Shown here one piece after another: positions 5,121 through 57,790 of a DNA stretch of 64,000 nucleotides; the stretch's first letter is position 1; every line of letters begins with the position of its first letter. Source of the stretch: Schmidtea nova (lineage: Eukaryota). A model generated the notes under the pieces. The model was given only the letters and a program-made list of their open reading frames with translations. It was not told the origin of the DNA and did not search any database. The position numbers and the translations under genes were made by a program. The DNA is taken from the NCBI GenBank assembly GCA_044892505.1, contig CM097882.1, positions 465,310,001 to 465,374,000 on the forward strand, in the 5' to 3' direction.

Positions 5121-5531
5121 TCTGTCAAATTACATACCTATTAAAATATAACCTAGCGTCTCTCGGTTTTCTCGTTATAATTCCATTATTAGTAAATTTT
5201 TATTTAGTGAGGTAGTCATTAGAAAAACCGACTAGGAAATACTACTTGCATCTCTATCACGAGACATTTATATTCTCTGGTTATGGGTCGGTAGATTAAT
5301 ATCCATTACTGTTAGGCCTCAGATTGCCTAAAGTAACAAATTTTAAATCTGGGTCCTCGAAAAAATTTATGACTGAATAACACCCTGCCTAGCCGGCTCG
5401 TGCGTTATCAACGATGCCTCATTAGTATTCAAAAAACAACAAAAAAATCTACTACAAAAGCTCCATTCGACCATAACGGCTGAATTAGTTATTTTACTAA
5501 GATTATTTTAGTTACATTTATTTTATACGGA

Positions 5532-6703
5532 TGTTGAGGTTCCAAATATTTGCTATTTGCAATCTCAACTTGTTATTGGGGTGATTCGTATATAAATATC
5601 AAAAACAAAGTTTGTTTCAAAATTTTATTAATACAATAAAATTACTTTTTATTCCGTTTACAATTAATCACTCAAATTCTTTATTACACAATTTTTTTAA
5701 AAGAAAAAGTCGTGTCAAATCAATTCTTGTAATTGAACCTATTGGGTGACTGCTATGTAGTGCGTGCTATATTTTATTTGTGGATCCAATGTTTCTGATC
5801 CGGGTTTTAATAAGTTTTTCAAGATTTCCTTGAAAACTCGATATTGCGCAGATTTTAATTCTTTAGTTTAAAATTCGATTTTTAAAGCTATGAAATTTTT
5901 GGGCCTTTTTTCTGATTTTTCCATCAGCTTATATAGTAAATTTTTTATCTTTTTAACCATCATATAATTATATTTATTAAAATATTTATATTTCAATCGG
6001 TCTTTTTAACCATCATATAATTGTATTTATTAAAATATTTATATTTCAATCGGTATTTTTAACCGGATTTTGTTTATTTTATCTGGCTCAATATCTAGAA
6101 TAATATCTAGAATTTACATCTAGTCGTTTTACAATTTGCCGTTATCTAAAATTATTATTTTTTTATTAAATATATATCTAAAATTTATTATCTACACTTT
6201 GCCCTTTTTAATATATTATTATCTAAAATTATTATTTTTTTATTAAATAAAATTTTATTATCTACAATTTGCCCTTTTTAATATATTATTACTTCACATC
6301 TCATGCACTGTCATATTTTTTATTTATACAGATATATTACCTTATAGATTTTTACACAAATATATATATAAAATTCAAATGATAATATAAGGAATAATTA
6401 TGAAATTCAAGTACAGAATAATTATATACACTTCAAATACAGAATAATGACACTCATATACAAAATTTAAAAGTATATTAAATAATAAAGTTGTGATCAC
6501 ATAAACATAGTCATATAGTGATTATTTGAGGCTTTGTTGGCTTTGATTGAAGAAGGGTGATTTTTTGAGGCGATTGAAGATGGAGTCTGCATTATTTTCG
6601 GACTGGGTTTCTGCATATATATTAACCCTGTATCGATTAGGCCCTGTCCTGTAATATTTGTTCAGGGTAAATGCTTGGATGGGCTTCCCTCGATCATCCA
6701 ACA
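5532..6703 (-). repeat. 3' LTR (1172 bp, carries a 53-bp tandem duplication at 5950-6055)
   Basis: Direct repeat of 17580-18700 with about 5 substitutions, the 53-bp duplication and a 2-bp (TA) length difference. Confidence 0.97.
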
Positions 6704-8513
6704 TTCCTCCCAGGGCCGTCAAAGTAATGTCCTCATTACCTTTTTCGCTCAGGACCATTTCAATTTCTTTATCCTTTAATTTCATTACTGTTCTCTTGAA
6801 TCCTTTCTTGATTGTAAGATTTAGGGTATCATCTTCCTCAATTCGTCTTCCGAAATGGGTACATAATTGTTTTTCCGTTATCTCTTTTTGGTCGGCACCT
6901 ATAATGAAGCTAGGTTCTTCCTCCTCTTCTATTTCCATTTCAATGTCTGGTTCTGGTCCTAATTCGTCTTCTGCTTTTATTTTACTCTCCATTCCTTTTG
7001 TGAAGTCTTCTTCGTCGTCTTCCTCAACTGAAAAATACTCTTCGTCCGAATCTAAATCGCATATGTCTTCTCTTTCTTTGTATTTTTGTATTAGTTGCGG
7101 TTCGTTTTTAATCATTATTTGATTTTCTGGTGGTCCTTCTTCTTTTGTAATCATTAGGTCGTCATCACCATCTTCATGTATTGTTTCTTCCATATCTGAA
7201 TTTTCATCCATTATTATACTTTCTTCTTCGCTTTCCTTCAACTCTTCCATACATGATTTTCTGTTTTGCATCTGGTATAGGTCTCCTTTCATTTCGATAT
7301 CGTCTGTTATTGGTGTATCACTTTGTAACGCTGTTGAAGCTGCTGAATTCCATTTTATTATCGGTTCCCATTTGTCTTCTACTATTCCATATATTACCTT
7401 TAATATTGTTGTTGTCTTTCTGGCAGAAAATGGCTCACTTTCTACTAATGCTTCATTCAGTCTCTTATCTTTGAACCATCTCTTATGGTATTTAATCACT
7501 TGGTAAGCTAAGTTGGATAGCTTAATTTTGAGTGGATCCACGTTTTTCACGAATGAGCACATAAATTTATCTCCGGCCATTTCTCTCATTCCTGCAATGT
7601 TGTCTAGACCAAATGTTAGCATTTTTAATTTATCTATCATATCAAATCCTATGATTATTTTTCCCCACAACAGCTTTCTGATATCCCATAGCGCCTGGTA
7701 CTCATCTTCATTTCCGACGATACTTTCTTTATTAATCATTGTTTTTTCTGTGCAGAAGTTTTTTATCTTCGTTCTTGGGGTTATCTTTTTGTTGTATATC
7801 ATTTCACCGTTGTACTTTCTTATACATACTTCTACTGGTCGCTTGTTGTCATTTTTATCAATTGCAAATTTTGCATCCATGAACATAATTAGTTGGTGTC
7901 TCTCTTCTGTGGATAATTCATTGTGTGTGAAAGAGATTTTTTCATTTATCCAGCTTTGCTCGTACCAAGGTTTTGAAGGGATTGGCGGCATTGATTGGAA
8001 TGGATTTGATATCAGAGGGATATAGAGTATCTCGATTCCTATGACACACGGTAAGTTGTTCATTTGGATTATGAGGTGATTAAAATCGTCTGGCATACTT
8101 CTGTTGTTTGTAATTGTTTTGATGATGATTGAACAATTACTTGTTGTGATTATTGGTACTTTATGTTGGCAAATTGATACCTCGGTTTTTGTCATGTGGA
8201 ATAGGATTCTATGTGGTACCTTTTTTCCTTCGATTACCGCTTTGTCGACATTAAAATGTTTTTCAAATGTGCCGATTAGGTCTTTTAGTTTTGTTCGTCG
8301 AGCTTCATTAAATTTGATAATGTGTAGTTCTCTTTCTTCAATTTCCACTTTCATATCATTTGGGATGCATACTTGGTTTGGGAAGCTTCTGATTGTGATT
8401 GGATTTCCATCGGTACATATTTTGTTTTGTAGGGTTTTGTAAAAGTTTAGAGGGTGTTTGTTGATCATAGCCACATAGTTCATAGATCGAGAATAATTTG
8501 GCTCTGATTGCAT
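6522..8513 (-). CDS. ORF3: unknown N-terminal region, degenerate DEDDh (REX4/ISG20-like) exonuclease domain, acidic tail; ends inside the 3' LTR
   Basis: IMFMDAKF / PVEVCIRKYNGEMIYNKKITPRTKIKNFCTEKTMI / RKLLWGKIIIGFDM / KLSNLAYQVI / FSARKTTTILKVIY follow the spacing of REX4-type motifs. Start taken as MQSEP (8513); the frame is open to 9017. Confidence 0.75.
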   Translation of the reverse strand: MQSEPNYSRSMNYVAMINKHPLNFYKTLQNKICTDGNPITIRSFPNQVCIPNDMKVEIEERELHIIKFNEARRTKLKDLIGTFEKHFNVDKAVIEGKKVPHRILFHMTKTEVSICQHKVPIITTSNCSIIIKTITNNRSMPDDFNHLIIQMNNLPCVIGIEILYIPLISNPFQSMPPIPSKPWYEQSWINEKISFTHNELSTEERHQLIMFMDAKFAIDKNDNKRPVEVCIRKYNGEMIYNKKITPRTKIKNFCTEKTMINKESIVGNEDEYQALWDIRKLLWGKIIIGFDMIDKLKMLTFGLDNIAGMREMAGDKFMCSFVKNVDPLKIKLSNLAYQVIKYHKRWFKDKRLNEALVESEPFSARKTTTILKVIYGIVEDKWEPIIKWNSAASTALQSDTPITDDIEMKGDLYQMQNRKSCMEELKESEEESIIMDENSDMEETIHEDGDDDLMITKEEGPPENQIMIKNEPQLIQKYKEREDICDLDSDEEYFSVEEDDEEDFTKGMESKIKAEDELGPEPDIEMEIEEEEEPSFIIGADQKEITEKQLCTHFGRRIEEDDTLNLTIKKGFKRTVMKLKDKEIEMVLSEKGNEDITLTALGGMLDDRGKPIQAFTLNKYYRTGPNRYRVNIYAETQSENNADSIFNRLKKSPFFNQSQQSLK
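6704..6711 (-). promoter_or_regulatory. Polypurine tract GGGAGGAA
   Basis: Purine run immediately 5' of the 3' LTR on the minus strand; short. Confidence 0.7.
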
Positions 8514-8529
8514 TGTTAATTGAAGACAC

Positions 8530-8669
8530 AAGAATCGGGATATTGATTGATAAGTTAGTAAACAATAAAACACTAAGAATCGGGATATTGATTGATAAGT
8601 TAGCAAACAATAAAACACTAAGAATCGGGATATTGATTGATAAGTTAGTAAACGATAAAACACTAAGAA
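8530..8669. repeat. 45-bp tandem repeat, 3 copies
   Basis: Unit AAGAATCGGGATATTGATTGATAAGTTAGTAAACAATAAAACACT with 1-2 substitutions, just upstream of the ORF3 ATG. Confidence 0.9.
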
Positions 8670-8949
8670 TATAGATTGATAATGAGATCGAGATATGATT
8701 TTACGACTTGATTTGTGATTGGATTGAAAATTGGAACGATTTGATTGGGAGTTGGTTTGATTGTTTTGATTGTGCTGAGGATTTGATGTAAAACTGGCTT
8801 TATTGGGTTGTTTGTCAAATGGGTGACTTGTTTTTCTAAAAATAAAATGTAAATTTTTATGTTGAGAGCGTATTTCAGGTTTAACCTTATACGCTATTTT
8901 ATAGATATAGATATATGTGATTTTAATATATATTATTGACCAATTTAAC

Positions 8950-9975
8950 TTATACCAATGTGGACCTCGAATATTCACCTGGTATATATTTATCCAAATG
9001 GAAATGCCCTGGTACATTTCTGACCAGTTGGCTCCGATACCGCTGCCTTTTCCATTTGTACTTTTTATAAATTTGTACGCTAGTTATTAAAGCTAAAACT
9101 GCTAATGCTATTATTGATGTTGTGATGACATAAAAAGGCCAATGTGGATTTTTATCTTTTTTACGAAATGCTTGTAGTTCCTCTAAGTTATGTATCACTA
9201 TTGGTCTTCCTTGCCTTATTTTGATAGGTTCTTGTTTTTGTTTTTTGGCATTGTATTGTTTTTGGAGTTTGGCTATTCCAGTGCTTGTTGGTATTTCGTT
9301 TGTATGTAGTGTGGTATTTAGTCTATTATTTGATGTCGTTGTGCTTTTTATTTTATCGGGTGTTATGTTTTGGTTTTTTATTATATCCTTGGGTAATTGT
9401 TCTGTTTTTATCTTTTTGCATCTCCATGTTGTTGTATCTGTGTTTCTCTGTATGCAGATTCTATATATTGTATTAGGTGTTAGTTTTGTGAAATTAATAT
9501 AGTTTCCTCTTTCGATTTCGTTGGTTGTTCTGTCGTCCTTTCCTTTTATCATCTTTGGGTTTTTCCCATTCGTTGTTTGCATGTATAAATCAATTACTCC
9601 TCTATTTATGATAAATGCTCTAACTTCGTTTGTTGATATTTTTATTAATACTCTGTCAAATTCTATTGTTTCGGTTGAGCCAACAATTGTTATGATTGTT
9701 AAGAAGATAGCCGATATTATTAGTTTGTTATGAGATCTTAGATTATACTTGTGAGGTTTATCTATCGTGACCTCGGCTTCCGCCAACTTGCATCTGTTGA
9801 CATGTACTACTATTGGATCCTCGTTTTTATGCTTTTGTAAATGTAAATTCTCATTTATTACTTTTACTACTTCATATGGACCTTTATATGGTCTTGCTAA
9901 TTTTGTTGTCTTTCCCTTTCCTACTTGTGGTGACATAAGTCTAACCTTATCACCTACTTTAAAGTTGTGTGGTTT
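8950..9975 (-). CDS. Integrase C-terminus (GPY) fused in frame to signal peptide, FN3-like ectodomain, Thr-rich stalk, TM helix and basic tail
   Basis: FKVGDKV..RPYKGPYEV, YNLRS, hydrophobic LIISAIFLTIITIVGS, YINFTKLTPNTIYRICIQ, TM WPFYVITTSIIALAVLALITSVQIY, KKYKWKRQR, all in one frame. Confidence 0.75.
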   Translation of the reverse strand, partial: KPHNFKVGDKVRLMSPQVGKGKTTKLARPYKGPYEVVKVINENLHLQKHKNEDPIVVHVNRCKLAEAEVTIDKPHKYNLRSHNKLIISAIFLTIITIVGSTETIEFDRVLIKISTNEVRAFIINRGVIDLYMQTTNGKNPKMIKGKDDRTTNEIERGNYINFTKLTPNTIYRICIQRNTDTTTWRCKKIKTEQLPKDIIKNQNITPDKIKSTTTSNNRLNTTLHTNEIPTSTGIAKLQKQYNAKKQKQEPIKIRQGRPIVIHNLEELQAFRKKDKNPHWPFYVITTSIIALAVLALITSVQIYKKYKWKRQRYRSQLVRNVPGHFHLDKYIPGEYSRSTLV

Positions 9976-11040
9976 TTTGTACCTGTATTTTTTCTTGTTG
10001 CACATATTGTACACGCGTTACACCATCTCTTAACATCTTTCTTTAATTCTTCCCAGTAATATTTTTGTAATAATCTACTTGCTGTCTTTCTAGATGATAA
10101 GTGACCTCCTAATGCTCCATCGTGATATTGTAGTAGGAGTATTTGTCTTAATTTCTGAGGTACTACTATTAGTTGCTTACCATTGAAATCTTCTATTACT
10201 ACTAATTTCTTTGATATTTTATACTTTGAATTGTTTTCTTTTCTGATTTCATTTTTTATTTTACTGATCTCTGGGTCTTTCATCTGTTCCTCATATATAT
10301 TGATTGGTTTTTCTGCTACTAGTGCAAATATTTCAAGTGCTCCTAATTCTGGTATTCTTGATAGTGCATCTGCGTTTTTATTTATTCTACCTGGTTTATA
10401 TATAATTTTTAGGTGCATGTCTTGTATTTTCATTGCCCATTTAAGTAATCTACTTGATGTATCTTTATGTTTCCATAAACCTTCTAATGGTTTATGGTCA
10501 GTTCTTATTATCACTTCAGTCCCATATATGTATGGTTTGAATTGTTTTAGGGCGAATACTATTGCGTAACATTCTTTTTCTATTGTTGAATACCTCAGCT
10601 GTGCTCCTTTTAATGTTTTACTGGCATATGCTATTACGTAATCTTTCCCTTTTTCTTCTTCTTGGCCTAAGACTGCTCCTACGGCTTTCCCGCTGGCATC
10701 CGTCATTACTATAAACTGTTTTTCGAAATCTGGGTATCTTAACACGGGTGCTGTTATCAATCTTTCTTTTAGTTTATTGAATGCTTCTTGGTGTTCCTTT
10801 GTCCACTTCTTTTGTATCTTGTTAACTTTGCTGTTAATTTCTTGTACTATTAGCACATTTTTGCATTCTCCTTTTGTTCTAATTCCCTTTGTTAGTTCTA
10901 TTATCGGTGATGCTATCTTTGCATAATCTTGTATGAGTTTACGATAGTACCCTGTTAGACCTAAAAACCCCTGTACTTGTTGTACTGTTTTTGGTATTGG
11001 GAATTTCTTTACCACTTCTATTTTTTCTGGATTTGTTTTA
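9954..11040 (-). pseudogene. pol: Pol segment: RT connection, RNase H, integrase HHCC zinc finger (integrase core deleted)
   Basis: FLGLTGYYRK, VMTDASGKAVGAVL, YSTIEKECYAI, RTDHKPL, NKNADALSR, YHD..GGHLS..KYYW..CNACTIC, then an out-of-frame jump straight to the GPY region. Confidence 0.93.
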
Positions 11041-13741
11041 TCCCTTCTACTGTAACTATATGCCCTAGAAATAACGCCGAAGGTTCTGCCCATTTACACT
11101 TAGTTGGTTTAATTTTAATTTTTGCTTTTCTTAGTCTCTCGAGTACATTTGTTATATCTTTTAAGTGTTCCTCAAATGTTTTTGATGATATTAGTATATC
11201 ATCCATGTAAACTGCGCAATGTTGTACATTTACTAATATTGTATTCATTAGGCGCTGAAATGTAGCTGGTGCGTTAGTTAACCCGAAAGGTAATCGTGTG
11301 TACTCATATAAACCATCCTCGATAACAAATGCTGTTTTTTCCGCATCCCCTTCTTCCATTTGAATTTGCATATATCCCTTATTTGCGTCAATAACTGAAA
11401 AATACTTAGCATCCCTAAGTTTATCGTATTGCTCTTGTGCTTTTGGGAATGGGTATGAGTCTTTTACTGTTACATCATTTAATTTACGATAGTCAATGCA
11501 CATTCTTATTTCTCCGTCTTTCTTTTTAACGGGTACAATGGCTGATGCCCACTGTGAAAAACTCTGTTTTATTACACCTGCATCGTTTAGTTCTTTGATT
11601 TGTCGTTTTATTTCTTCTCTTAACTTGTATGGTACGCTGTATGGTCTTTGTTTTATTGGTCTCGCATTACCTGTATCTATTACATGTTTGATTATATCGG
11701 TATCTCCTAGATCAAATTCGTGTTTTGCAAAAACATCACTATATTTATCTATCAATGTTTGTAGTTGTGCTTGTTGTGTTATTGTTAAGTATTCATTATT
11801 AATTTTTACTTTGTCATATGATTTTATATTATTTATCTTACTAGGTTCGACTACTCCCTTGCCGTTATTATTCATCACGCTTATCTCACTGACTTCGTAT
11901 GTTTTTTCTAATTCACCTTTGAATAATTTTCCCAATTTCGTACCTTTGTGTATTTTATTATTACTTTTTTCATAATTTGCTATTCTCAATGGTATTATTC
12001 CCTTTCTCGGAATTACGCATTCATTGGTTAGCATTATATTCTGATTTTGTATAATTGCCGTTTCTGGCTCAAAAATAAAAGTGTCCTCACTTTTGATGTT
12101 AACTTTTAAGGGAATTATATGATCGCATTCATATTCCAATTCAAATGCTTCTAATGCAACAACTTCTGTGAACTTGGATTTATGTTTAATTGCTTTTCTC
12201 TTTATCATATTATCTGTTAAATCTATAATGCAATTTTCTAACTTGTTGAGTATATCGATTCCCAATATACATATGCTATTACATTCTTGCACCACTTTAA
12301 ATATGTGGTTTATTACCTGTTCTGGTGTTTCGACTATTAGTTCTATGTCTCCCTTTAGTGGAATACGATGTGCTGATAACGATACTACTTTATCCGTTGT
12401 GCTCATAATATTTCTTTTTTGATCATCTGTCAGTTGATCTTCTCTAATTAAGGATGTTGCTGCTCCTGTGTCTACTAATGCATTTATGATTATATTGTTT
12501 ATAATTATTCTAAGTCTTGGTCTTGCTTCGTTTGCTGCATCTAATCGTTCCATTGTTTCGACTTCTAAGCTATAACAACCATATATCTTTTTAGGTTCAC
12601 AATGACAATTCTTGTTTTCTCTAGGAATTTTGATTTCTATATTTTCTTGTAGCTCTTTTAGTTGTTCTCTTTGGTTTTCATATAGTCCTTGTTGTGGTAC
12701 ATTTCCTTCATGTGATATATGCGCTTTAATTATTTCCTCATCGTTTTCATCATCTACCAGTAATTGCCTTTCTTCACTCCTTTGGACTTTTATTAAACGT
12801 ATTTCCTTGTCGTGTTTCGCCGTAATAAGATATTTAGCTATAAATGGGCACAAACATGCTAATAATTTATATGAATTTCCAAATACTTGTTTTAGCTGTC
12901 TTAGTGATACTAGAGAAGAACATATCATTTTTAGTAATGCAACCGTATAATATATACCTAAGATCGTAGAAAACATGTTTCCAATGACTGCAAAGTATCC
13001 CCATATGCTATATAGTACTTTATATGCTACTTTTTTGAAGTATTCTTTTGATAATAACACATCAAAGTTGTAATTTCCTCCGTAACTTCCTTCGATAACT
13101 CTGTTAACCATTATTGAAAGTACTCTTTCTTTTTCGTTTGGAAATAGCACGTGTTTTCTTGCACTTTCTATAGCTTCTCTCGTATATATGCCATTACTGT
13201 CCATATCGTTGATTTCTTTAAACTCTAATCTTTTTTCTAGCTCTATGAGTTCTAATTTGAGTGGTTTCATTGCCTCCTTTCTATCTGACATAGATATCCA
13301 CATTTCGTCATTTATTTTGTATAATGGGTCTAATAGGTTAGTGCATTTTTCTATTTTTCTCGGTATATATGTTTTTTCTGTTAATATTCTAGTAATTAGT
13401 TGAAGGTATACCCTTTCTCCTTTATATATTACCGGTAATTCATTAGTGCACTGATTATTTGTTGCTAACGATACACTAACAGGTTTACATTGAAATGTCT
13501 GTATCACTTCTCCTACTATCCTTGCAAATGTTCCTTCTTCTGAGAAGATTATTGGTGCCATTAAATCTGGGTTTGTTACCGCCACTGCCATTTTTGTCCT
13601 CAATATTTCTCTGTTGAGTTTGCAATCGCTCATAATTGTTGATTGATATACTTTATCTAATTGTACTAGTTGGTTATGATAGAAAAAATCGATTTTATTG
13701 TTGAAGTATGATGCAAGTTTGACGTCGAATTTATTTACTTT
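11018..13741 (-). CDS. pol: Polyprotein segment: glycoprotein C-half with TM, aspartic protease, reverse transcriptase
   Basis: GEVIQTFQCKPV..CTNELPVIY..TRIL..NGIYT..FPNE..IWGYFAVIG (glycoprotein), ALVDTGAA and CILGIDIL (protease), RMCIDYRKLN, LPFGLTNAPATFQR, YMDDILI (RT). A 1-nt loss in an A-run near 11036-11040 shifts the frame. Confidence 0.93.
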   Translation of the reverse strand, partial: KVNKFDVKLASYFNNKIDFFYHNQLVQLDKVYQSTIMSDCKLNREILRTKMAVAVTNPDLMAPIIFSEEGTFARIVGEVIQTFQCKPVSVSLATNNQCTNELPVIYKGERVYLQLITRILTEKTYIPRKIEKCTNLLDPLYKINDEMWISMSDRKEAMKPLKLELIELEKRLEFKEINDMDSNGIYTREAIESARKHVLFPNEKERVLSIMVNRVIEGSYGGNYNFDVLLSKEYFKKVAYKVLYSIWGYFAVIGNMFSTILGIYYTVALLKMICSSLVSLRQLKQVFGNSYKLLACLCPFIAKYLITAKHDKEIRLIKVQRSEERQLLVDDENDEEIIKAHISHEGNVPQQGLYENQREQLKELQENIEIKIPRENKNCHCEPKKIYGCYSLEVETMERLDAANEARPRLRIIINNIIINALVDTGAATSLIREDQLTDDQKRNIMSTTDKVVSLSAHRIPLKGDIELIVETPEQVINHIFKVVQECNSICILGIDILNKLENCIIDLTDNMIKRKAIKHKSKFTEVVALEAFELEYECDHIIPLKVNIKSEDTFIFEPETAIIQNQNIMLTNECVIPRKGIIPLRIANYEKSNNKIHKGTKLGKLFKGELEKTYEVSEISVMNNNGKGVVEPSKINNIKSYDKVKINNEYLTITQQAQLQTLIDKYSDVFAKHEFDLGDTDIIKHVIDTGNARPIKQRPYSVPYKLREEIKRQIKELNDAGVIKQSFSQWASAIVPVKKKDGEIRMCIDYRKLNDVTVKDSYPFPKAQEQYDKLRDAKYFSVIDANKGYMQIQMEEGDAEKTAFVIEDGLYEYTRLPFGLTNAPATFQRLMNTILVNVQHCAVYMDDILISSKTFEEHLKDITNVLERLRKAKIKIKPTKCKWAEPSALFLGHIVTVEGIKQIQKK

Positions 13742-15367
13742 TTATTTTGCATCTTTGACTTCTTCTTTGCTTATGTATATCCCTTCATAATTAGTTTGTA
13801 TTATTTCCTTACCACATTTTACACTTTTCCTTTTACTAACAAACCTCATTGCTTCGTTTTCAGATTCTGACATATATATTGTTGGTGTATCTTTTTCTTG
13901 TACAATTGTTGTTTTCCTTTCTTGATCTCTCACCCTTTTTGAGTCTACTTCTGTGAACTGTTTTCCTTTGATTTCCCTAAATTTTAATGATTTTAATTTT
14001 GTTAATTGGCAATCATATTTATCTATTTTGTATATTAGCATTGATTCTCCTGTATCGCAATAAGATTCTTCTAATGTACAAAATTTGTATATCATCATTT
14101 TCTTTGAGCTGCTGTCGAATGATGCTTTGAACTTTCTCAGTTCTACCATGTAGTGTCTCCTTACTACAATATTACTCAGTTTTTCGCCCCATATTGTATA
14201 TTCTCCTCCTTCACAATATCCTCCTTTTGATGTCCATCCCACGACATTTACATCTTGTCTCATTTTTGCCCCTATCCTTGCTTCTAATTCTATTCCTTTA
14301 TGACCGCTATATTTTACTTTCTTTGTTTTAAATGCATCTTCACACTCTATTGGTGACAATATTACTGCTTCGGGTGTCCACGTAGGTTTTAACACTGTTC
14401 TTGCCCCAACATGACATATATATGCTTCCTCCTGATACTTTACTATGCACTCTTTGGCCTCTGTATGAATAAAGTCTGATTCTTGATAAACATGGAATAT
14501 TTGAGGCTCTGACATGATTAATTTAGTTGGATTTGCTTCAGGGCAATTTTCAACATCTAACAGTGAGTATTTTTGTCCCCACTTTGGATTTTGACAATCA
14601 TATGCTACCATTGCATTGCCTCCCTTGATTAAATCTAATAACAAAGTGATAATGACTATTACTATGGAGGTTATCGATTTACTCTCTGTCTTTGGTTTTA
14701 CTGTTGCTTTCTTTATTAATTGTTTTATTACCTCATCTGTATCACTCTCTTTATTCGTCGTATCTTTATCATATAATAGTTTCCATCCTCCTTTCTTTTT
14801 TATCCATGGTATTGCCTCTACTTTCAATCTTTTAAACATCATTGTTGCTACTTTTTCTAATTGCTCTTTTGGATTTTCCTTTATGAGCTTTTTATATCTT
14901 GCGGCCAAGTATGCCATGGCCGTTATTATTTTATCTTTATCTATCCCTGTATTAAACATGATTTTTAACACTGTTTTTTCATTTGCTTCCTCTGTAGCTA
15001 GTTCTTTAGTATCCTTTTTAATTAACATCATCCTTTCAGTTATATTTTCAATAAGTACTGTTGGCTTTGTTTCTGGAAATAGCTTAATATTCATTGCTTT
15101 TATTACTTCTTTTATTTTGTTTACGTCATTATTATCGTCTTGATACTCTGGTTGTTCATGTTTATGTTGATTTGCAATCTCTCTTAATCGTTCTGCTGTC
15201 TTCCTATTCTCCGATTTTTCTATTATTTCTGATTTTCGAGGTCTTCCTCTACCTCGTTTTGATGTTTCTGCATCTTTTGTTCTTGCTTCCTCAGCTATTC
15301 TTTCTATTGTTTCTTGTAAGTTACTATACTTTTCATCTATAGGTTTAAATATAATTTCTTCATCCAT
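13742..15367 (-). CDS. Polyprotein N-part: AT-hook, Bcl-2-like domain, signal anchor, glycoprotein N-half (premature TAA at 13742-13744; same frame continues)
   Basis: KRGRGRPRK; AERLREIANQ; MFNTGIDKDKIITAM; PWIKKKGGWKLL; SIVIVIITLLLDLI; AYDC..YSLLDVENC..YCEGG..YCDTGESMLIY. The 108 nt between the TAA and the next ORF are open and in frame. Confidence 0.85.
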   Translation of the reverse strand: MDEEIIFKPIDEKYSNLQETIERIAEEARTKDAETSKRGRGRPRKSEIIEKSENRKTAERLREIANQHKHEQPEYQDDNNDVNKIKEVIKAMNIKLFPETKPTVLIENITERMMLIKKDTKELATEEANEKTVLKIMFNTGIDKDKIITAMAYLAARYKKLIKENPKEQLEKVATMMFKRLKVEAIPWIKKKGGWKLLYDKDTTNKESDTDEVIKQLIKKATVKPKTESKSITSIVIVIITLLLDLIKGGNAMVAYDCQNPKWGQKYSLLDVENCPEANPTKLIMSEPQIFHVYQESDFIHTEAKECIVKYQEEAYICHVGARTVLKPTWTPEAVILSPIECEDAFKTKKVKYSGHKGIELEARIGAKMRQDVNVVGWTSKGGYCEGGEYTIWGEKLSNIVVRRHYMVELRKFKASFDSSSKKMMIYKFCTLEESYCDTGESMLIYKIDKYDCQLTKLKSLKFREIKGKQFTEVDSKRVRDQERKTTIVQEKDTPTIYMSESENEAMRFVSKRKSVKCGKEIIQTNYEGIYISKEEVKDAK

Positions 15368-17340
15368 TACTGATTTCTTTGTTTCGCTAGGTGATTTATA
15401 CTCAACTCAACCGACGGTACTGGCGTCATTATTTCATTGATCATTTGTTTTTCTACTGTGGCTACCACAATATTATCACTTACTGGGTTTATCCCATAAT
15501 CGATTAAGTACTCGTCACTTAATAATTCTATTCCGTTAAAATATAATTTTATTACATCCTTCTCTCCTATGGTTCCTGGCCATTTGGCTCTTACCATTCG
15601 TTTTAATTTGCTCACTTTAGTGCAAGGATGCATCTTTTGTTTAATACTAAAAAAATAATTATCATTTGATTCAATCGTTACATTTAGTGTTTCATGAAAT
15701 TTTTCATTTTTTCTTATATATTCTCCATAACATTTCAGTATCTCTTTTATTTCTATTTCTAATTCAAATACTCTCGTTACATTTTGTCTCTTTACCATCA
15801 TTGGTATTAAATTTCTAAGTCTCTCTAAATCAATCCCATTAACCTGTATTTTATTGATTACTCTTAATGTTTCATTGTCATCAAACGGTTGCTTATGCAA
15901 TACCTCTTTAAATTCCTCTATTAATTCTTTTTGTCTATTTTCTTCTGTAAGAAATATTTCATCTGCTTTTCTAATTTCCTTTAACTCATCATTATCAATA
16001 TCTACTTCATTTGTAAAGGTGCTAAATTCATTTATAGACATTTCAAGTTTTCTCTCAATAAGTCTTCCATATTGAGTTTTAAATTCTTTTAGTTCCTCTC
16101 TTAATATATTTATTTCTTTATTTGCTGATTCGAGCTCAGCACTATTTACTTGTTTTATCTCAGGCTCATTTTTAAATCTTACTCTTATTGGTGAATCTGC
16201 TCGTGGTTTATTACATACCTTTGCTAGGTGGCCATACTTTTGGCAATTATAACATTTTATTTGTCCATTAAAATTCACTTTATCTCTACCATCATTATTA
16301 TAAGTATTTCGCCTCACTGGGCTATCTTGTCTATTTCTCGAATTATCTCTATATCTATTATCTCTTCTATTATATTCGAAGCGACTATCTCTATTATTTT
16401 TATTATATCCACTGTAACTGTTTCTGTTATAACCAGAACGACTATCTCTAAAATTATCTCTGTTGTCTCTATCATTATCTCTATCAAAACGATTGTCTCT
16501 AAAACTGTCTCTATTATTGTTTCTTTGATAACTATCTTTAAAATTATTTCTATTTCTATTATCGAAATTTTTATTTCCTGGACTATTAAACCTTCCCCTG
16601 TTTTCAGGTGATTGGCTTCTATTAGGACTAAATTTTCTTCTATTATTAACAAATTTCAAGTATAATTGTTTCATTTCTTCCCAGGGAATACTATCATCCT
16701 TATTTCTCAACTCAGGTTTTACCTCGGGTTGTTTTTCAACTTCTACAGCATCTACCTCTGGTTTAAATCTATCTCTTTGTATTGCTTCGATACGTTTTGC
16801 CTTTTGAACTAACTCATTTAAGTCTTCATACTCAATTGTAATTAATGCTTTGTATAAATATTTTTGGATTCCGTTCCAAAACTGATCCTCGATTAACCTA
16901 CTAGTGTGATCTCCTGCACCAAATGCCTTTTTTGCTAATTCTGTTATCGTGTATATATATTCACCTACTGATTCTCTTGCTCCTTGGTATCTACTTCTAA
17001 ATTTTTGAACATTTATTTTTTGTAAGTCTCTATCTATTACTATTTCTTTTCTAAGGTTTGTAACTAACTCTTGATAATTAATGCCTTTACATGCTAAATT
17101 ATTGTATGCTTGTAATGCGTATCCTTTTAAATATAATGGAATTCGTTGTTTTAATTCATTTGTTTTCCATCCGCAAGCCTCTGCATATTGTGCGATTTCG
17201 GCAAAAAAGTCGTCGAACTTTTCAGGGTCTCCTTTATATGATTCTATTGGTAGTGTTTTTATAAAATTATGATTACTGTTGATGTTGTCTGTATTGCTGT
17301 TACTTCCACTATTATTGCTGCCTGTACTATTATTACTCAT
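15367..17340 (-). CDS. gag: Gag (capsid, RS/RD-rich linker, CCHC knuckle, coiled coil, C-terminal ubiquitin-like domain)
   Basis: YKGDP..FF..YAEACGW..LYLKGYALQAY, Q..RESVGEY..L..KAF, CYNCQKYGHLAKVC, then LYFNGIELLSDEYLIDYGI. Confidence 0.92.
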   Translation of the reverse strand: MSNNSTGSNNSGSNSNTDNINSNHNFIKTLPIESYKGDPEKFDDFFAEIAQYAEACGWKTNELKQRIPLYLKGYALQAYNNLACKGINYQELVTNLRKEIVIDRDLQKINVQKFRSRYQGARESVGEYIYTITELAKKAFGAGDHTSRLIEDQFWNGIQKYLYKALITIEYEDLNELVQKAKRIEAIQRDRFKPEVDAVEVEKQPEVKPELRNKDDSIPWEEMKQLYLKFVNNRRKFSPNRSQSPENRGRFNSPGNKNFDNRNRNNFKDSYQRNNNRDSFRDNRFDRDNDRDNRDNFRDSRSGYNRNSYSGYNKNNRDSRFEYNRRDNRYRDNSRNRQDSPVRRNTYNNDGRDKVNFNGQIKCYNCQKYGHLAKVCNKPRADSPIRVRFKNEPEIKQVNSAELESANKEINILREELKEFKTQYGRLIERKLEMSINEFSTFTNEVDIDNDELKEIRKADEIFLTEENRQKELIEEFKEVLHKQPFDDNETLRVINKIQVNGIDLERLRNLIPMMVKRQNVTRVFELEIEIKEILKCYGEYIRKNEKFHETLNVTIESNDNYFFSIKQKMHPCTKVSKLKRMVRAKWPGTIGEKDVIKLYFNGIELLSDEYLIDYGINPVSDNIVVATVEKQMINEIMTPVPSVELSINHLAKQRNQ

Positions 17341-17559
17341 TTTGTATATTACCTTATTTCTTAACTTGTGTAATATTTCAGGTTGCTTATCTATAATAAC
17401 TTTCTTTATCTTTTTACCTATTTTGTTATTGTTAACCTTATATGTTTGTATATTTTTGAATTTCTGTTTTGGTCAATAATATTTATATAAATATATTTTC
17501 CCAATATATATTACAATATCCCTCTGATCGCAATTCCTATCCCCCAATTGATTTTATTG

Positions 17560-17577
17560 TCCCGGTTCGCGGCACCA
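17560..17577 (-). promoter_or_regulatory. Primer binding site TGGTGCCGCGAACCGGGA, probably tRNA-Phe
   Basis: Lies 2 nt inside the 5' LTR and starts TGG; the complement ends CGGCACCA as in metazoan tRNA-Phe(GAA) 3' ends. Confidence 0.8.
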
Positions 17578-17579
17578 AA

Positions 17580-18700
17580 TGTTGAGGTTCCAAATATTTG
17601 CTATTTGCAATCTCAACTTGTTATTGGGGTGATTCGTATATAAATATCAAAAACAAAGTTTGTTTCAAAATTTTATTAATACAATAAAATTACTTTTTAT
17701 TCCGTTTACAATTAATCACTCAAATTCTTTATTACACAATTTTTTTAAAAGAAAAAGTCGTGTCAAATCAATTCTTGTAATTGAACCTATTGGGTGACTG
17801 CTATGTAGTGCGTGCTATATTTTATTTGTGGATCCAATGTTTCTGATCCGAGTTTTAATAAGTTTTTCAAGATTTCCTTGAAAACTCGATATTGCGCAGA
17901 TTTTAATTCTTTAGTTTAAAATTCGATTTTTAAAGCTATGAAATTTTTGGGCCTTTTTTCTGATTTTTCCATCAGCTTATATAGTAAATTTTTTATCTTT
18001 TTAACCATCATATAATTATATTTATTAAAATATTTATATTTCAATCGGTCTTTTTAACCGGATTTTGTTTATTTTATCTGGCTCAATATCTAGAATAATA
18101 TCTAGAATTTACATCTAGTCGTTTTACAATTTGCCGTTATCTAAAATTATTATTTTTTTATTAAATATATATCTAAAATTTATTATCTACACTTTGCCCT
18201 TTTTAATATATTATTATCTAAAATTATTATTTTTTTATTAAATAAAATTTTATTATCTACAATTTGCCCTTTTTAATATATTATTACTTCACATTTCATG
18301 CACTGTCATATTTTTTATTTATACAGATATATTACCTTATAGATTTTTACACAAATATATATATATAAAATTCAAATGATAATATACGGAATAATTATGA
18401 AATTCAAGTACAGAATAATTATATACACTTCAAATACAGAATAATGACACTCATATACACAATTTAAAAGTATATTAAATAATAAAGTTGTGATCACATA
18501 AACATAGTCATATAGTGATTATTTGAGGCTTTGTTGGCTTTGATTGAAGAAGGGTGATTATTTGAGGCGATTGAAGATGGAGTCTGCATTATTTTCGGAC
18601 TGGGTTTCTGCATATATATTAACCCTGTATCGATTAGGCCCTGTCCTGTAATATTTGTTCAGGGTAAATGCTTGGATGGGCTTCCCTCGATCATCCAACA
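17580..18700 (-). repeat. 5' LTR (1121 bp)
   Basis: Near-identical to 5532-6703; a TATATAA and several AATAAA are present on the minus strand. Confidence 0.97.
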
Positions 18701-19000
18701 CGGACAACAATCATAACAACAACGAATTTGTAATAAATCAACATCAAATTACAACAAAGTAACAGTACTATATGCACAATTTGAAATTTAAAATTTGTCT
18801 CTGATCAATTTGACTCTGTGGGGACAGTTGGTTGGGAGATCAGATGGAGTCGGCCCAAACACAAAACGGCCCATCAGAAATTCTGCTGTTGGAATGGTTC
18901 CGATGTGTAATGTAATTTTTTATAGTGAGCGTATGATATTTGGGTTCTTTTCGGTTAACTGATCGCATTTTTAAAAATATATTTTATTGATCAAAATCAT

Positions 19001-19876
19001 TTAAATTTCAATATCCGGTGGACAAAAATCAGCAATAAAGCGAAGAATCTGGTCAAACGGTTCATCTTCGCCCCTGTTTCGTCGCCACATGAATTCCTCC
19101 ATATATGATTCCAGAAAAATACGCTTGGTGCCGCTCTGCCTTTTGTTTCGCCACTTCACAGTACGCCACATCCTTTCAGCATTTTGTGTGTGAGCACCGG
19201 TGTCCGGATCGACGAAATTGTAGCGGTGATTGACGCGCTGATGAGTAAAGCCAGTATCCTGCAGTCCGTTGTAAGCACGCCATGAATCGGTTATGATCGT
19301 AGAATTTTGGTGAACATGTTCGGCGATGATCGGCAAGAGAGTGGCGACACTTCGATCAATAACTCGGACAAGGAACACCTGTTTGGTTTCACGACAAATC
19401 CCTCCGAGCATCCATTGCTGTGGCAAAACACGACCCGCATGATTCTTCCGCTTGCTGAACAGGCTTTCATCGATTTCCACGACCATTCCTTCGCCTCCGA
19501 TTATCTGATGCTCTTGTTGAAGGCACCAAGAGCACACTTCGCGCATGAATTTGCAGTATTTGACCGTCGTCTCTCCGTCCATTTCCAGTTGACGTTCGCA
19601 GAATTTGATAGATGCCCATTCCTCAGCCCAGGCGTAGATGAATCGGATGATTGTTTCATAAGGTAGTCGGAGGCCTTCGGTCCAGTTTCCAACTCTCATT
19701 CTCACAGTTCGGTGACACGAGGCTCGATTGCACTTCCAATGGACTTGTTTTCCAAAATATAGCTTCATTTGATGTCCTTTGGCACGCACACGCATGGCCG
19801 GCAGAATCCCACGCTCTTGCAGAAATAGGACACTCTCTTCCTCTCCGTTGGGCAATTCGTGATATTTGAGAACCAT
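19001..19876 (-). CDS. Merlin (IS1595/ISXO2-like) DDE transposase, intact ORF
   Basis: VVEIDESLFSKRK, WMLGGICRET, STIITDSWRAY, HQRVNHRYNFVDPDTGAHTQNAERMW, SYMEEFMWR. A 15-bp inverted repeat lies at 18958-18972 / 20068-20082; true termini not established. Confidence 0.93.
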   Translation of the reverse strand: MVLKYHELPNGEEESVLFLQERGILPAMRVRAKGHQMKLYFGKQVHWKCNRASCHRTVRMRVGNWTEGLRLPYETIIRFIYAWAEEWASIKFCERQLEMDGETTVKYCKFMREVCSWCLQQEHQIIGGEGMVVEIDESLFSKRKNHAGRVLPQQWMLGGICRETKQVFLVRVIDRSVATLLPIIAEHVHQNSTIITDSWRAYNGLQDTGFTHQRVNHRYNFVDPDTGAHTQNAERMWRTVKWRNKRQSGTKRIFLESYMEEFMWRRNRGEDEPFDQILRFIADFCPPDIEI

Positions 19877-27097: not shown

Positions 27098-27502
27098 NNN
27101 NNNNNNNNNNNNNNNNNNNNNNNNNNNNNNNNNNNNNNNNNNNNNNNNNNNNNNNNNNNNNNNNNNNNNNNNNNNNNNNNNNNNNNNNNNNNNNNNNNNN
27201 NNNNNNNNNNNNNNNNNNNNNNNNNNNNNNNNNNNNNNNNNNNNNNNNNNNNNNNNNNNNNNNNNNNNNNNNNNNNNNNNNNNNNNNNNNNNNNNNNNNN
27301 NNNNNNNNNNNNNNNNNNNNNNNNNNNNNNNNNNNNNNNNNNNNNNNNNNNNNNNNNNNNNNNNNNNNNNNNNNNNNNNNNNNNNNNNNNNNNNNNNNNN
27401 NNNNNNNNNNNNNNNNNNNNNNNNNNNNNNNNNNNNNNNNNNNNNNNNNNNNNNNNNNNNNNNNNNNNNNNNNNNNNNNNNNNNNNNNNNNNNNNNNNNN
27501 NN
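27098..27502. other. Assembly gap (N run)
   Basis: 405 N bases. Confidence 1.
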
Positions 27503-52980: not shown

Positions 52981-53303
52981 NNNNNNNNNNNNNNNNNNNN
53001 NNNNNNNNNNNNNNNNNNNNNNNNNNNNNNNNNNNNNNNNNNNNNNNNNNNNNNNNNNNNNNNNNNNNNNNNNNNNNNNNNNNNNNNNNNNNNNNNNNNN
53101 NNNNNNNNNNNNNNNNNNNNNNNNNNNNNNNNNNNNNNNNNNNNNNNNNNNNNNNNNNNNNNNNNNNNNNNNNNNNNNNNNNNNNNNNNNNNNNNNNNNN
53201 NNNNNNNNNNNNNNNNNNNNNNNNNNNNNNNNNNNNNNNNNNNNNNNNNNNNNNNNNNNNNNNNNNNNNNNNNNNNNNNNNNNNNNNNNNNNNNNNNNNN
53301 NNN
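52981..53303. other. Assembly gap (N run)
   Basis: 323 N bases. Confidence 1.
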
Positions 53304-56600: not shown

Positions 56601-57224
56601 ATGGAATTAAGAAATGATGCAGTGTTTCAAATTGTTGGTCCGAGCGGGAGCGGAAAAACTTTATTTGTTTGTAAATTATTGCTATCGAAATTATTCAAAT
56701 CAAAATTCAATAAAATTTATTGGCATAGGGGTGCTGACGACGAAAGCGGAATGACTCAAGATCAATTTTGTAAAATAAAATTGACAATCATAAAAGGTTT
56801 CGATAAAAACTGGTCATCTAGATTGCGTCAAGGTGATGTTATTATCATTGATGATTTGTATCAAGAAGCAAATAAAGAAAAGGATTTCAATAATTTATTT
56901 ACGAAAATCAGTAGACATAAAGGTGTTACTGTTATTTTTATAACTCAGAATTTATTTCATCAGGGCGGCAGTCATCGAACCCGTAATTTAAATGTTCGAT
57001 ATCTTGTTGTGTTTAAAAATCCTAGAGATGCAACAGTTATTGATTTTCTGGCAAGACAAGCTTATCCTTCAAATCGTAACTTTTTGATGGAAGCCTTTCA
57101 AGATGCTACAAAATCTCCTCATGGATATATTTTCCTGGATTTTAATCAACAATGCAGTGATGATTTAAGAGTTAGAACTGATATTTTTAACAAGGAAGGA
57201 GCCATGGTTTATAAACAAAGTTAA
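56601..57224 (+). CDS. A32/FtsK-like DNA packaging ATPase
   Basis: Walker A GPSGSGKT, Walker B IIIDD, SRHKGVTVIFITQNLF, RTRNLNVRYLVVFKNPRD. Confidence 0.95.
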   Translation: MELRNDAVFQIVGPSGSGKTLFVCKLLLSKLFKSKFNKIYWHRGADDESGMTQDQFCKIKLTIIKGFDKNWSSRLRQGDVIIIDDLYQEANKEKDFNNLFTKISRHKGVTVIFITQNLFHQGGSHRTRNLNVRYLVVFKNPRDATVIDFLARQAYPSNRNFLMEAFQDATKSPHGYIFLDFNQQCSDDLRVRTDIFNKEGAMVYKQS

Positions 57225-57244
57225 ATTGATTTACAGTAATAATA

Positions 57245-57787: not shown

Positions 57788-57790
57788 ACA

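What the first reader, a model, noticed from the sequence alone, without database searches (positions are those of the whole stretch)
11018..14680. Viral fusion glycoprotein placed between gag and pol and fused in frame to protease-RT in a Ty3/Gypsy element
Seen: from a signal-like helix (about 14610-14680) the frame encodes about 600 aa with AYDC..YSLLDV..C, C..GES.LIY, GEV....CKPV.V, C.NELPV.Y, TRIL, GIYT..FP.E and WG.F...G...S..LGIY, then continues in the same frame into ALVDTG protease and YMDD RT (only one TAA intervenes). Knowledge: this motif series is what I recognise from chuvirus (Jingchuvirales) class III-type glycoproteins, and env genes of retroviruses and errantiviruses normally lie 3' of pol as a separate ORF. 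Inference: an independent env capture giving an Env-Pol polyprotein in which Pol is made membrane-tethered behind the glycoprotein TM and released by its own protease. This would be a new kind of invertebrate retrovirus-like architecture.
Basis: partly seen in the sequence, partly recalled or inferred. Interest (0 to 1): 0.95.

Follow-up and report, generated by a model that had tools for sequence, protein, structure and literature searches.

The report
Burro-like retroelement with in-frame viral fusogen
This is a recently inserted but broken 13-kb Ty3/gypsy retrovirus-like element whose chuvirus-type fusion glycoprotein sits in frame between gag and protease-RT, a real and striking layout that was already described for planarian 'Burro' elements in 2019 and for other gag-env-pol elements since.

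Summary
On the minus strand lies a complete LTR retroelement (5532-18700; LTRs 99.6% identical, TG..CA, 4-bp target duplication). Its second gene encodes a BCL2-like module, a hydrophobic helix, a Monjiviricetes/chuvirus-type class III fusion glycoprotein (Pfam PF24664, E 4e-20 and 5e-62; fold matches only to gB, GP64, rhabdovirus G and chuvirus G), a membrane anchor, then protease and RT in the same frame.

The in-frame fusion is a family trait, not an accident. Thirteen distant relatives in public data carry G and protease in one uninterrupted ORF. Seven of these run on through RT, and six through the integrase core. All fused glycoproteins form one clade.

The window copy itself is defective: one stop in the glycoprotein, and one frameshift plus one deletion in pol, so no integrase core is left.

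The novelty claim is not supported. Arkhipova and Yushenova (2019) described exactly this order (gag, SUMO-like, BCL2-like, mononegavirus-type env, PR) in Burro elements and called it the first in-frame env between gag and pol. Gag-env-pol elements were later reported in nematodes, bryozoans and flatworms.

This is a compact new member of a known kind. A membrane-tethered Env-Pol polyprotein is a coherent inference but remains untested.

The parts
5532..18700 (-). Whole LTR retroelement (13,169 bp)
   Evidence: LTR pair, TG..CA ends and flanking 4-bp duplication
17580..18700 (-). 5' LTR (1,121 bp)
   Evidence: 99.55% identical to the 3' LTR over aligned bases: 5 mismatches plus a tandem-repeat length difference
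5532..6703 (-). 3' LTR (1,172 bp)
18701..18704 (-). Target-site duplication TCCG, upstream copy
5528..5531 (-). Target-site duplication TCCG, downstream copy
17560..17577 (-). Putative primer-binding site, starting TGG two bases after the 5' LTR
   Evidence: Read directly from the sequence. The cognate tRNA was not identified.
6704..6711 (-). Polypurine tract abutting the 3' LTR
15367..17340 (-). gag ORF (657 aa): capsid-like N-terminal part, one CCHC knuckle, C-terminal extension
   Evidence: zf-CCHC at E 3e-4. 29% identity to the Retrotrans_gag ORF of L001. phmmer hits to the N-termini of P0025, P0023 and P0089.
16210..16260 (-). CCHC zinc knuckle of gag
15487..15681 (-). Possible SUMO/ubiquitin-like domain at the gag C-terminus (weak)
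   Evidence: PF11976 Rad60-SLD at E 0.017, below threshold. Burro elements have the same family in the same position (PMC6431247).
8950..15367 (-). env-pol polyprotein gene, broken in this copy: one stop in the glycoprotein part, and one frameshift and one deletion in pol
14783..14986 (-). BCL2-like module (BH1-BH2 region), sub-threshold
   Evidence: PF00452 at E 8.7e-7, 29.9 bits against a cut-off of 31.4. About 50 Bcl-xL chains match at E 0.07-0.5 with one ungapped alignment. A weak PF00452 hit lies in the same position in relative P0026. Helical in the AF2 model, pLDDT 70-80.
14618..14674 (-). Hydrophobic helix: internal signal or signal-anchor of the glycoprotein, placed where a Bcl-2 tail anchor would be
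   Evidence: Kyte-Doolittle 2.12. Helix 232-246 in the model.
12725..14665 (-). Class III fusion glycoprotein (chuvirus / Monjiviricetes G type), given as one part although it is broken
   Evidence: PF24664 on both pieces. AF2 pLDDT above 90 over most of it. Foldseek. Invariant cysteines in 90- and 94-sequence alignments.
12908..12988 (-). Membrane anchor of the glycoprotein
   Evidence: Hydropathy. Long helix in the model.
12236..12529 (-). Retroviral aspartyl protease (DTG), same frame as the glycoprotein
   Evidence: PF00077 at E 4e-7. Motif visible.
11054..11530 (-). Reverse transcriptase (YMDD), same frame as the glycoprotein and protease
   Evidence: PF00078 at E 3e-36
10419..10805 (-). 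RNase H (Ty3/gypsy type)
   Evidence: PF17917 and PF17919 at E about 1e-38
9787..10163 (-). Integrase remnants: the H2C2 zinc domain and the C-terminal SH3-like domain. The catalytic core is absent.
   Evidence: PF17921 at E 1e-19, with weak PF24626 and PF22938. The rve domains of three intact relatives are 0% covered.
8950..9726 (-). Unassigned segment in frame behind integrase. A signal-like helix (9664-9720), about 175 residues and a second membrane helix (9076-9132) give it the look of a type I membrane protein.
   Evidence: Hydropathy. No Pfam or PDB match.
6522..9017 (-). 3' accessory ORF (831 aa) with an exonuclease-like (RNase T / ISG20) region at 7365-8366 and an acidic tail. It runs into the 3' LTR.
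   Evidence: BLASTP E 3e-19 to the PF00929-bearing ORF downstream of pol in L003. Weak ISG20-family PDB hits. No Pfam hit of its own.

Best explanation
The region is the env-pol gene of a young, full-length but defective Ty3/gypsy (Metaviridae-like) endogenous retrovirus-like element. It belongs to the Burro-like, gag-env-pol lineage.

Shown: gene order is LTR, gag (capsid-like, CCHC, possible SUMO-like domain), then one long frame holding a BCL2-like module, a hydrophobic helix, a chuvirus-type class III fusion glycoprotein, a membrane anchor, PR and RT. RNase H, integrase remnants, an unassigned membrane-protein-like segment and an exonuclease-like accessory ORF follow, then the 3' LTR. Relatives keep glycoprotein, PR, RT, RH and IN in one uninterrupted ORF, and some include gag as well. 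The fused glycoproteins form one clade nested among stand-alone chuvirus-like G proteins. So a glycoprotein of a negative-strand RNA virus was captured once, long ago, upstream of PR.

Inferred: the family translates a polyprotein in which the internal hydrophobic helix sends the ectodomain into the ER lumen. The anchor then leaves PR-RT-RH-IN on the cytosolic side, tethered to the membrane. Signal peptidase would separate the BCL2-like module, leaving it with a tail-anchor-like helix, from mature G. The element's own protease would free Pol from the G tail. Trimeric G on budding Gag particles would then allow cell-to-cell spread, while the BCL2-like module would delay death of the producing cell.

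This copy cannot do this as it stands: it has one stop in G, and one frameshift and one deletion in pol that leave no integrase core.
For: Element anatomy: LTRs, TSD, PBS and PPT.

Domains.

Class III fold, tested on the window's own two pieces:
- AF2 mean pLDDT 75.6 for the first piece (glycoprotein part above 90) and 84.9 for the second.
- Foldseek against PDB gives 64 hits at E<=1e-3 for the first piece, and the 50 listed are all gB, GP64 or vesiculovirus G. The second piece's top 50 are all gB.
- Foldseek against BFVD is led by chuvirus and chu-like G, at E 7e-20 to 1e-15.
- A family profile against PDB sequences finds only gB, 33 sequences.

Closest stand-alone relatives include a named chuvirus glycoprotein and beetle EVE-like glycoproteins.

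Conserved fusion:
- P0019, P0020, P0021, P0022, P0023, P0024, P0025, P0027, P0028, P0089, P0102, P0171 and P0177 carry PF24664 and an aspartyl protease in one ORF.
- Seven of these continue through RT, and six through the rve core.
- Four have gag similarity in the same ORF.

In L001 the two glycoprotein halves are contiguous, so the stop is specific to this copy. The fused G proteins form one clade of 18 among 142 sequences. Defects were counted against three intact relatives. Topology rests on the hydrophobic segments.

Literature: PMC6431247 and PMC13524379.
Against: - No second copy of this exact family could be found. Whether its own intact copies keep the G-PR-RT frame and the separate gag ORF is therefore inferred from relatives at 26-44% identity.
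- The way gag and env-pol are co-expressed is unknown. The gag stop overlaps the env-pol ATG, with env-pol in the -1 frame. Only 13 open codons lie upstream and no canonical slippery heptamer is present. L001 and L004 have a +1 relation instead, and other relatives have one continuous ORF.
- The BCL2-like and SUMO-like assignments are below Pfam thresholds.
- The ectodomain has no N-glycosylation sequon.
- Signal-peptidase and protease processing, particle formation and fusion activity are untested.
- The NJ tree has no support values.
- Direct homology to Burro sequences was not tested, because no tool returned them.
Confidence: 0.8

Rival explanations
1. The glycoprotein is an unrelated endogenous viral element (a chuvirus EVE, or a piece of another element) that landed by chance inside a gypsy element. 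On this view the shared frame with PR-RT is coincidence.
For: EVE-like stand-alone chuvirus-type glycoproteins are common in animal genomes (PMC7642597). The copy carries a stop in G.
Against: Thirteen relatives at 26-44% identity keep G and PR in one ORF. The fused G proteins are monophyletic. No repeats or target duplication flank the G segment. The pre-signal region is also shared with P0026.
Confidence: 0.02
2. The in-frame layout is real, but Env and Pol are not made as one membrane-tethered polyprotein. Env would come from a spliced or subgenomic mRNA, or by reinitiation. Pol would reach particles by another route, such as a Gag-linked product that bypasses or skips the ectodomain, or internal initiation downstream of the anchor.
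For: The gag stop and the env-pol start overlap, and no slippery site is present. The frame relation between gag and env-pol is not conserved among relatives (note 6). Classical retroviruses and errantiviruses make Env from spliced RNA (established knowledge).
Against: Relatives keep thousands of codons open from G through IN, and sometimes from gag. That is hard to explain unless the long frame is translated. No splice signals were tested.
Confidence: 0.15
3. The element is only a dead relic. The family has no envelope function any more, and G is kept in relatives only because their insertions are young.
For: This copy has three disabling defects. Fusion activity has never been shown for this clade. 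The ectodomain has no glycosylation sequon.
Against: G is conserved across relatives that are only 26-44% identical. Its cysteines are invariant and its fold is confidently predicted. That implies long purifying selection on the protein.
Confidence: 0.05

Closest known systems
Burro / GYPSM1 giant Ty3/gypsy elements of planarians (Jurka 2007; Grohme et al. 2018; Arkhipova & Yushenova 2019, PMC6431247)
   Same: The module order is the same: gag with CCHC, a SUMO-like domain (PF11976), a BCL2-like motif, then an env region with hits to mononegavirus fusion glycoproteins lying in frame between BCL2 and PR, then PR-RT-RH-IN plus accessory ORFs. The relative L001 also carries ankyrin repeats, as Burro does.
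   Different: This element is 13.2 kb rather than over 30 kb. Its gag is a separate ORF rather than part of a 4,873-aa ORF1. No MATH/TRAF, BIR, ankyrin or dUTPase domain was found in this copy. The host is unknown. Sequence-level relatedness to Burro was not tested.
Non-canonical nematode endogenous retroviruses (Sacco et al. 2022, J Gen Virol 103:001739; cited in PMC13524379)
   Same: According to the title and the citing text, a metavirus captured an RNA-virus glycoprotein gene and has env ahead of pol.
   Different: The host phylum is different. The paper is not held, so I could not check details. My memory that it describes one continuous gag-env-pro-pol frame and a nyami/chuvirus-like G is unverified.
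GAG-ENV-POL 'errantiviruses' with HSV/gB-type ENV in Nematoda, Bryozoa and Platyhelminthes (Chary & Hayashi, eLife 2026, PMC13524379)
   Same: These are Ty3/gypsy elements with a class III fusogen placed between gag and pol. The ectodomain is flanked by a signal peptide and a TM, or by two TM helices. My models also match gB best in the PDB.
   Different: That study treats ENV and POL as separate ORFs, allowing gaps of up to 2 kb, and does not mention in-frame fusion or BCL2-like modules. I could not test whether this element is one of their families, because no supplement is held.
Anakin: BEL/Pao elements with a chuvirus glycoprotein in mosquitoes (Dezordi et al. 2020, PMC7642597)
   Same: An LTR retroelement carrying a chuvirus-type G.
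   Different: It belongs to a different superfamily (BEL/Pao). In P0123, G follows a DUF5641 domain, which I take from my own knowledge to be a BEL/Pao pol marker, so I read P0123 as Anakin-like with G behind pol. I did not check where P0123 falls in the tree.
Glycoproteins of Jingchuvirales / Mononegavirales (Pfam PF24664 Monjiviricetes_fusion)
   Same: The protein family, the fold and the conserved cysteines are the same.
   Different: Identity to the stand-alone, virus-like G proteins is 23-30%. Here the protein is embedded in a retroelement polyprotein, with a long pre-signal region and PR-RT behind its tail.

Membership tests
Ty3/gypsy (Metaviridae-like) LTR retroelement | Two LTRs with TG..CA ends and a 4-6 bp target-site duplication, with a PBS and a PPT next to the LTRs | tested here: met
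Ty3/gypsy (Metaviridae-like) LTR retroelement | Domain order PR-RT-RH-IN, with gypsy-type RNase H and H2C2 integrase domains | tested here: met
   PF00077, PF00078, PF17917/PF17919, PF17921 and weak PF24626/PF22938, in that order. The nearest pol proteins have gypsy-type domain sets.
Ty3/gypsy (Metaviridae-like) LTR retroelement | Integrase catalytic core (rve) present | tested here: not met
   Absent from this copy but present in relatives. This is a defect of the copy, not of the family.
Ty3/gypsy (Metaviridae-like) LTR retroelement | RT groups with Ty3/gypsy in a phylogeny with curated references | not tested
   No reference set is available through the tools.
Monjiviricetes fusion glycoprotein (PF24664; chuvirus-type G) | Profile match above the curated threshold over most of the profile | tested here: met
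   71.9 and 210.4 bits against a cut-off of 27, covering profile positions 4-207 and 304-638 of 653
Class III viral fusion proteins | Fold shared with gB, GP64 and rhabdovirus G | tested here: met
   Foldseek probability 0.92-1.00, with class III fusogens alone at the top of both lists. TM-scores are low (0.2-0.3) because half-ectodomains were modelled apart.
Class III viral fusion proteins | Trimer formation, fusion loops and membrane-fusion activity | not testable with these tools
   Only monomer half-models were made. No functional evidence exists.
Burro-like gag-env-pol elements | env in frame between a BCL2-like motif and PR | tested here: met
   The definition comes from PMC6431247.
Burro-like gag-env-pol elements | BCL2-like and SUMO-like modules upstream of env | tested here: inconclusive
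   PF00452 scores 29.9 bits against a cut-off of 31.4, and PF11976 has E 0.017. Bcl-xL PDB hits have E 0.07-0.5.
Burro-like gag-env-pol elements | Giant size (over 30 kb) with a single polyprotein of about 4,900 aa from gag to IN, plus MATH/TRAF, BIR, ankyrin and dUTPase modules | tested here: not met
   The element is 13.2 kb, gag is in a separate frame, and none of these modules is found.
Burro-like gag-env-pol elements | Sequence relatedness to Burro1-4/GYPSM1, and a planarian host | not testable with these tools
   No tool returned Burro sequences, and the host of the window could not be identified.
Bcl-2 family | Helical bundle with BH1 and BH2 motifs and a C-terminal tail anchor | tested here: inconclusive
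   The sequence signal is sub-threshold but consistent. Helices have pLDDT 70-80. A hydrophobic helix lies about 35 residues behind the BH2-like motif. The fold of this part could not be searched on its own.

The most novel reading that the evidence does not exclude
This would be a compact (13-kb) branch of the Burro-like lineage with its own expression logic:
- gag is a separate ORF whose stop overlaps the env-pol start.
- One hydrophobic helix serves both as the tail anchor of a captured BCL2-like protein and as the signal of the fusogen, so a single signal-peptidase cut would yield an anti-apoptotic membrane protein and mature G.
- A second membrane-protein-like segment follows, in frame behind integrase.
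- The accessory exonuclease-like ORF has lost its catalytic residues.

Together with the many uninterrupted G-PR-RT-RH-IN ORFs in environmental assemblies, this would make Env-Pol polyprotein retroelements a broad, still-active animal lineage rather than a planarian curiosity.
Probability: 0.25. Interest if true: 0.55.

Novelty: new member of a known kind. Interest (0 to 1): 0.4.

Why it matters
It gives an independent, tool-based confirmation that a negative-strand RNA virus glycoprotein was built into the polyprotein of a Ty3/gypsy lineage, upstream of protease.

It shows that this layout is kept in at least 13 distant relatives in public assemblies, all from one capture. It also shows that compact 13-kb forms with nearly identical LTRs exist alongside the giant Burro elements.

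For annotation, such loci should be filed as gag-env-pol (Burro-like) endogenous retrovirus-like elements. They are not chuvirus EVEs, and they are not a new class.

The open biological question is how a membrane-inserted Env-Pol polyprotein is expressed and processed. That question is general to the lineage and can be approached with descriptive transcript and proteome data.

Tried and rejected
- Exact-sequence look-ups of gag, the neighbouring IS1595-like transposase and a 555-aa ORF found nothing. The host and other copies therefore stay unknown.
- Rfam and tRNA scans of the window found nothing.
- A word-based homologue search with the whole G-PR-RT piece was swamped by RT hits. Restricting it to the G part gave one hit. 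The search with the pre-signal region gave none.
- The closest pol relative, on L002, has no glycoprotein.
- There is no other copy or solo LTR of the element in the window.
- The metagenome scan for close relatives found none.
- Sacco et al. 2022 is not held. The eLife supplements are not held. The ENA sample accession appears in no paper.
- One Pfam call failed on a mis-framed reference.
- A programmed -1 frameshift at the gag/env-pol junction was considered and is not supported, because no slippery heptamer is present.
- A nested-insertion origin of G was considered and rejected (see rivals).
- L001 shows no LTR pair within the 23.9 kb fetched.
Full report
**1. What is there.**
ORF listing and translation of the minus strand show a string of long ORFs between two direct repeats.
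- The repeats are LTRs of 1,121 and 1,172 bp (17580-18700 and 5532-6703). They are 99.55% identical over aligned bases, differ by a tandem-repeat length, and start TG and end CA.
- A 4-bp duplication (TCCG) flanks the element. A TGG-initiated primer-binding site lies two bases inside the 5' LTR, and a purine tract abuts the 3' LTR.
- The element is therefore a complete, recently inserted LTR retroelement of 13,169 bp.
- No other copy or solo LTR lies in the window.

**2.
The stated frame contains every listed motif. It runs from a hydrophobic helix through about 600 residues into a DTG protease and a YMDD RT, with a single in-frame stop inside the glycoprotein part.
- The two glycoprotein pieces, searched apart, match Pfam PF24664 (Monjiviricetes_fusion, viral fusion glycoprotein) at E 3.7e-20 and E 4.5e-62, together covering profile positions 4-207 and 304-638 of 653.
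- The second piece also matches RVP and RVT_1.

**3. Fold.**
I modelled the window's own two pieces separately, each with an alignment of about 90 natural relatives.
- First piece: the glycoprotein part has pLDDT above 90. Foldseek against the PDB gives 64 hits at E<=1e-3; the 50 listed are all class III fusogens: herpesvirus gB, baculovirus GP64, and Chandipura and VSV G.
- Second piece: mean pLDDT is 84.9, and its top 50 PDB matches are all gB (central helix plus domain IV).
- Against predicted viral structures, the best matches are chuvirus and chu-like glycoproteins, then xinmo-, nyami- and rhabdo-like G, at E 7e-20 to 1e-15.
- A family profile against PDB sequences finds only gB.
- Eight columns are invariant in the first alignment and six in the second. 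Eleven of these fourteen are cysteines.
- TM-scores are low (0.2-0.3) because half-ectodomains were modelled apart.

**4. Is the in-frame fusion an accident of this copy?**
It is not.
- An exhaustive search of 1.84 billion representatives with the C-terminal half of G gave 848 hits in two tiers.
- The top tier (32-44% identity) consists of long proteins. The second tier (23-30% identity) consists of stand-alone glycoproteins of 650-690 aa. These include a named chuvirus glycoprotein and beetle EVE-like genes.
- Pfam scans show PF24664 followed by one or more aspartyl proteases in a single uninterrupted ORF in P0019, P0020, P0021, P0022, P0023, P0024, P0025, P0027, P0028, P0089, P0102, P0171 and P0177.
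- Seven of these continue through RT and RNase H. Six of them, up to 4,099 aa long, continue through the integrase core.
- Four also carry gag similarity or a gag domain upstream in the same ORF.
- In locus L001 the two halves of G are contiguous in one frame, so the stop in the window is specific to this copy.
- In a neighbour-joining tree of 142 G domains, all retroelement-fused G proteins fall into one clade of 18 (no support values were computed).
- The capture therefore happened once, before these families diverged. It was not an independent event in this element.

**5. State of this copy.**
Against three intact relatives, G, PR, RT, RNase H and the integrase zinc domain are fully covered. 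The integrase core is 0% covered, and the env-pol frame changes twice.
- Glycoprotein: one stop.
- pol: one frameshift and one deletion, which leave no integrase core.
- gag, the LTRs and the 3' ORF are open.
- The places of the breaks are deliberately not listed.

**6. Other parts of the element.**
- gag (657 aa) has one CCHC knuckle. It resembles the Retrotrans_gag ORF of L001 and has a weak SUMO-like signal at its C-terminus.
- The first 235 residues of the env-pol gene precede the signal-like helix. They contain a sub-threshold but consistent BCL2-like signal: PF00452 at E 8.7e-7 and 29.9 bits against a cut-off of 31.4, and about 50 Bcl-xL chains aligned without gaps over BH1-BH2.
- Relative P0026 shows the same weak signal in the same position.
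- The hydrophobic helix follows the BH2-like motif by about 35 residues, where a Bcl-2 tail anchor would lie.
- Behind the integrase C-terminal domain, in frame, lies an unassigned segment that looks like a type I membrane protein.
- The last ORF (831 aa) is homologous (E 3e-19) to the RNase_T-family ORF downstream of pol in L003. It gives weak ISG20 hits. In that alignment the catalytic residues of the relative are not matched in the window protein.

**7. How it probably works.**
The shown facts are the anatomy, the fold, the conserved long frame and the two hydrophobic segments. The rest is inferred:
- The internal helix acts as a signal or signal-anchor.
- The ectodomain is lumenal, and the anchor leaves PR-RT-RH-IN cytosolic and tethered to the membrane.
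- Signal peptidase and the element's protease cut the polyprotein.
- G then arms Gag particles.
- The BCL2-like module, and in relatives the ankyrin and other modules, act on the host cell.

How gag and env-pol are co-expressed is open:
- In the window, the gag stop overlaps the env-pol ATG, env-pol is in the -1 frame, and no slippery heptamer is seen.
- L001 and L004 have a +1 relation.
- Other relatives have one continuous frame.

**8. Comparison with what is known.**
- Arkhipova and Yushenova 2019 (PMC6431247) describe planarian Burro/GYPSM1 elements. These have gag with CCHC knuckles, a SUMO-like domain (PF11976), a BCL2-like motif, and an env region between BCL2 and PR that hits fusion glycoproteins of arthropod and fish mononegaviruses. 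[quoted passage not shown]
- Chary and Hayashi (PMC13524379) report GAG-ENV-POL Ty3/gypsy elements with class III ENV in Nematoda, Bryozoa and Platyhelminthes. They cite Sacco et al. 2022 for nematode elements that arose when a metavirus captured an RNA-virus glycoprotein.
- Dezordi et al. 2020 (PMC7642597) describe BEL/Pao elements carrying a chuvirus G.
- The architecture is thus already known. The window element differs by its compact size, its separate gag ORF and the absence of several Burro modules.
- Direct relatedness to Burro and the host species could not be tested. The AT-rich composition would fit a planarian, but that is only a guess.

**9. Verdict.**
- The claims of independent capture and of a new architecture are not supported.
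- This is a new member of a known kind, of moderate interest.

- In my reasoning I also worked out the position of the stop from the ORF table.

Noticed in passing
window 56601-61934, + strand: A run of close-packed same-strand ORFs. It includes a Pox_A32-like packaging ATPase (E 1e-6) and a double-jelly-roll-like capsid domain (E 4e-4, below threshold). This looks like a Polinton/Maverick-like or polinton-like-virus insertion.
   Followed up: partly
window 19001-19876, - strand: An intact 291-aa ORF with an ISXO2/IS1595-like DDE transposase domain (E 3.5e-18), about 300 bp outside the 5' LTR. No exact copy is on record.
   Followed up: partly
window 25004-25729 (-) and 31335-32306 (-): Fragments of other mobile elements: an RVT_1 reverse-transcriptase ORF (E 2e-18) and a weak hAT dimerisation-domain ORF.
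   Followed up: no
window 6522-9017, - strand; L003 9547-11619: The element's 3' accessory ORF is homologous to an RNase_T/ISG20-like exonuclease ORF that follows pol in a distant relative. In the pairwise alignment, the window protein does not keep the relative's catalytic acidic and histidine residues.
   Followed up: partly
window 8950-9726, - strand: In frame behind the integrase C-terminal domain lie a signal-like helix, about 175 residues and a second membrane helix. This resembles a type I membrane protein and has no family match.
   Followed up: partly
window 12989-14617, - strand: The glycoprotein ectodomain has no N-x-S/T sequon. Composition shuffles of the two pieces give zero sequons in 35% and 13% of trials, so the joint chance is about 0.05.
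   Followed up: yes
L001, L003, L004 (ENA ERZ25039515): One ENA assembly holds at least three diverged families of these elements. L001 carries six or more aspartyl-protease domains and ankyrin repeats spread over several overlapping ORFs.
   Followed up: partly
P0024 (NCBI HBK71150.1): A 2,627-aa G-PR-RT-RH-IN protein is deposited as a hypothetical protein of a Flavobacteriaceae MAG. This is almost certainly a eukaryotic contig binned into a bacterial genome.
   Followed up: no
window 15250-15260 region of the env-pol N-terminus; P0019 N-terminus: A short basic GRP (AT-hook-like) motif is shared by the pre-signal regions of the window protein and P0019. The Pfam AT_hook match is only E 0.058.
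   Followed up: no
window 27098-27502 and 52981-53303: Two runs of N (assembly gaps or masked stretches). They were left untouched.
   Followed up: no
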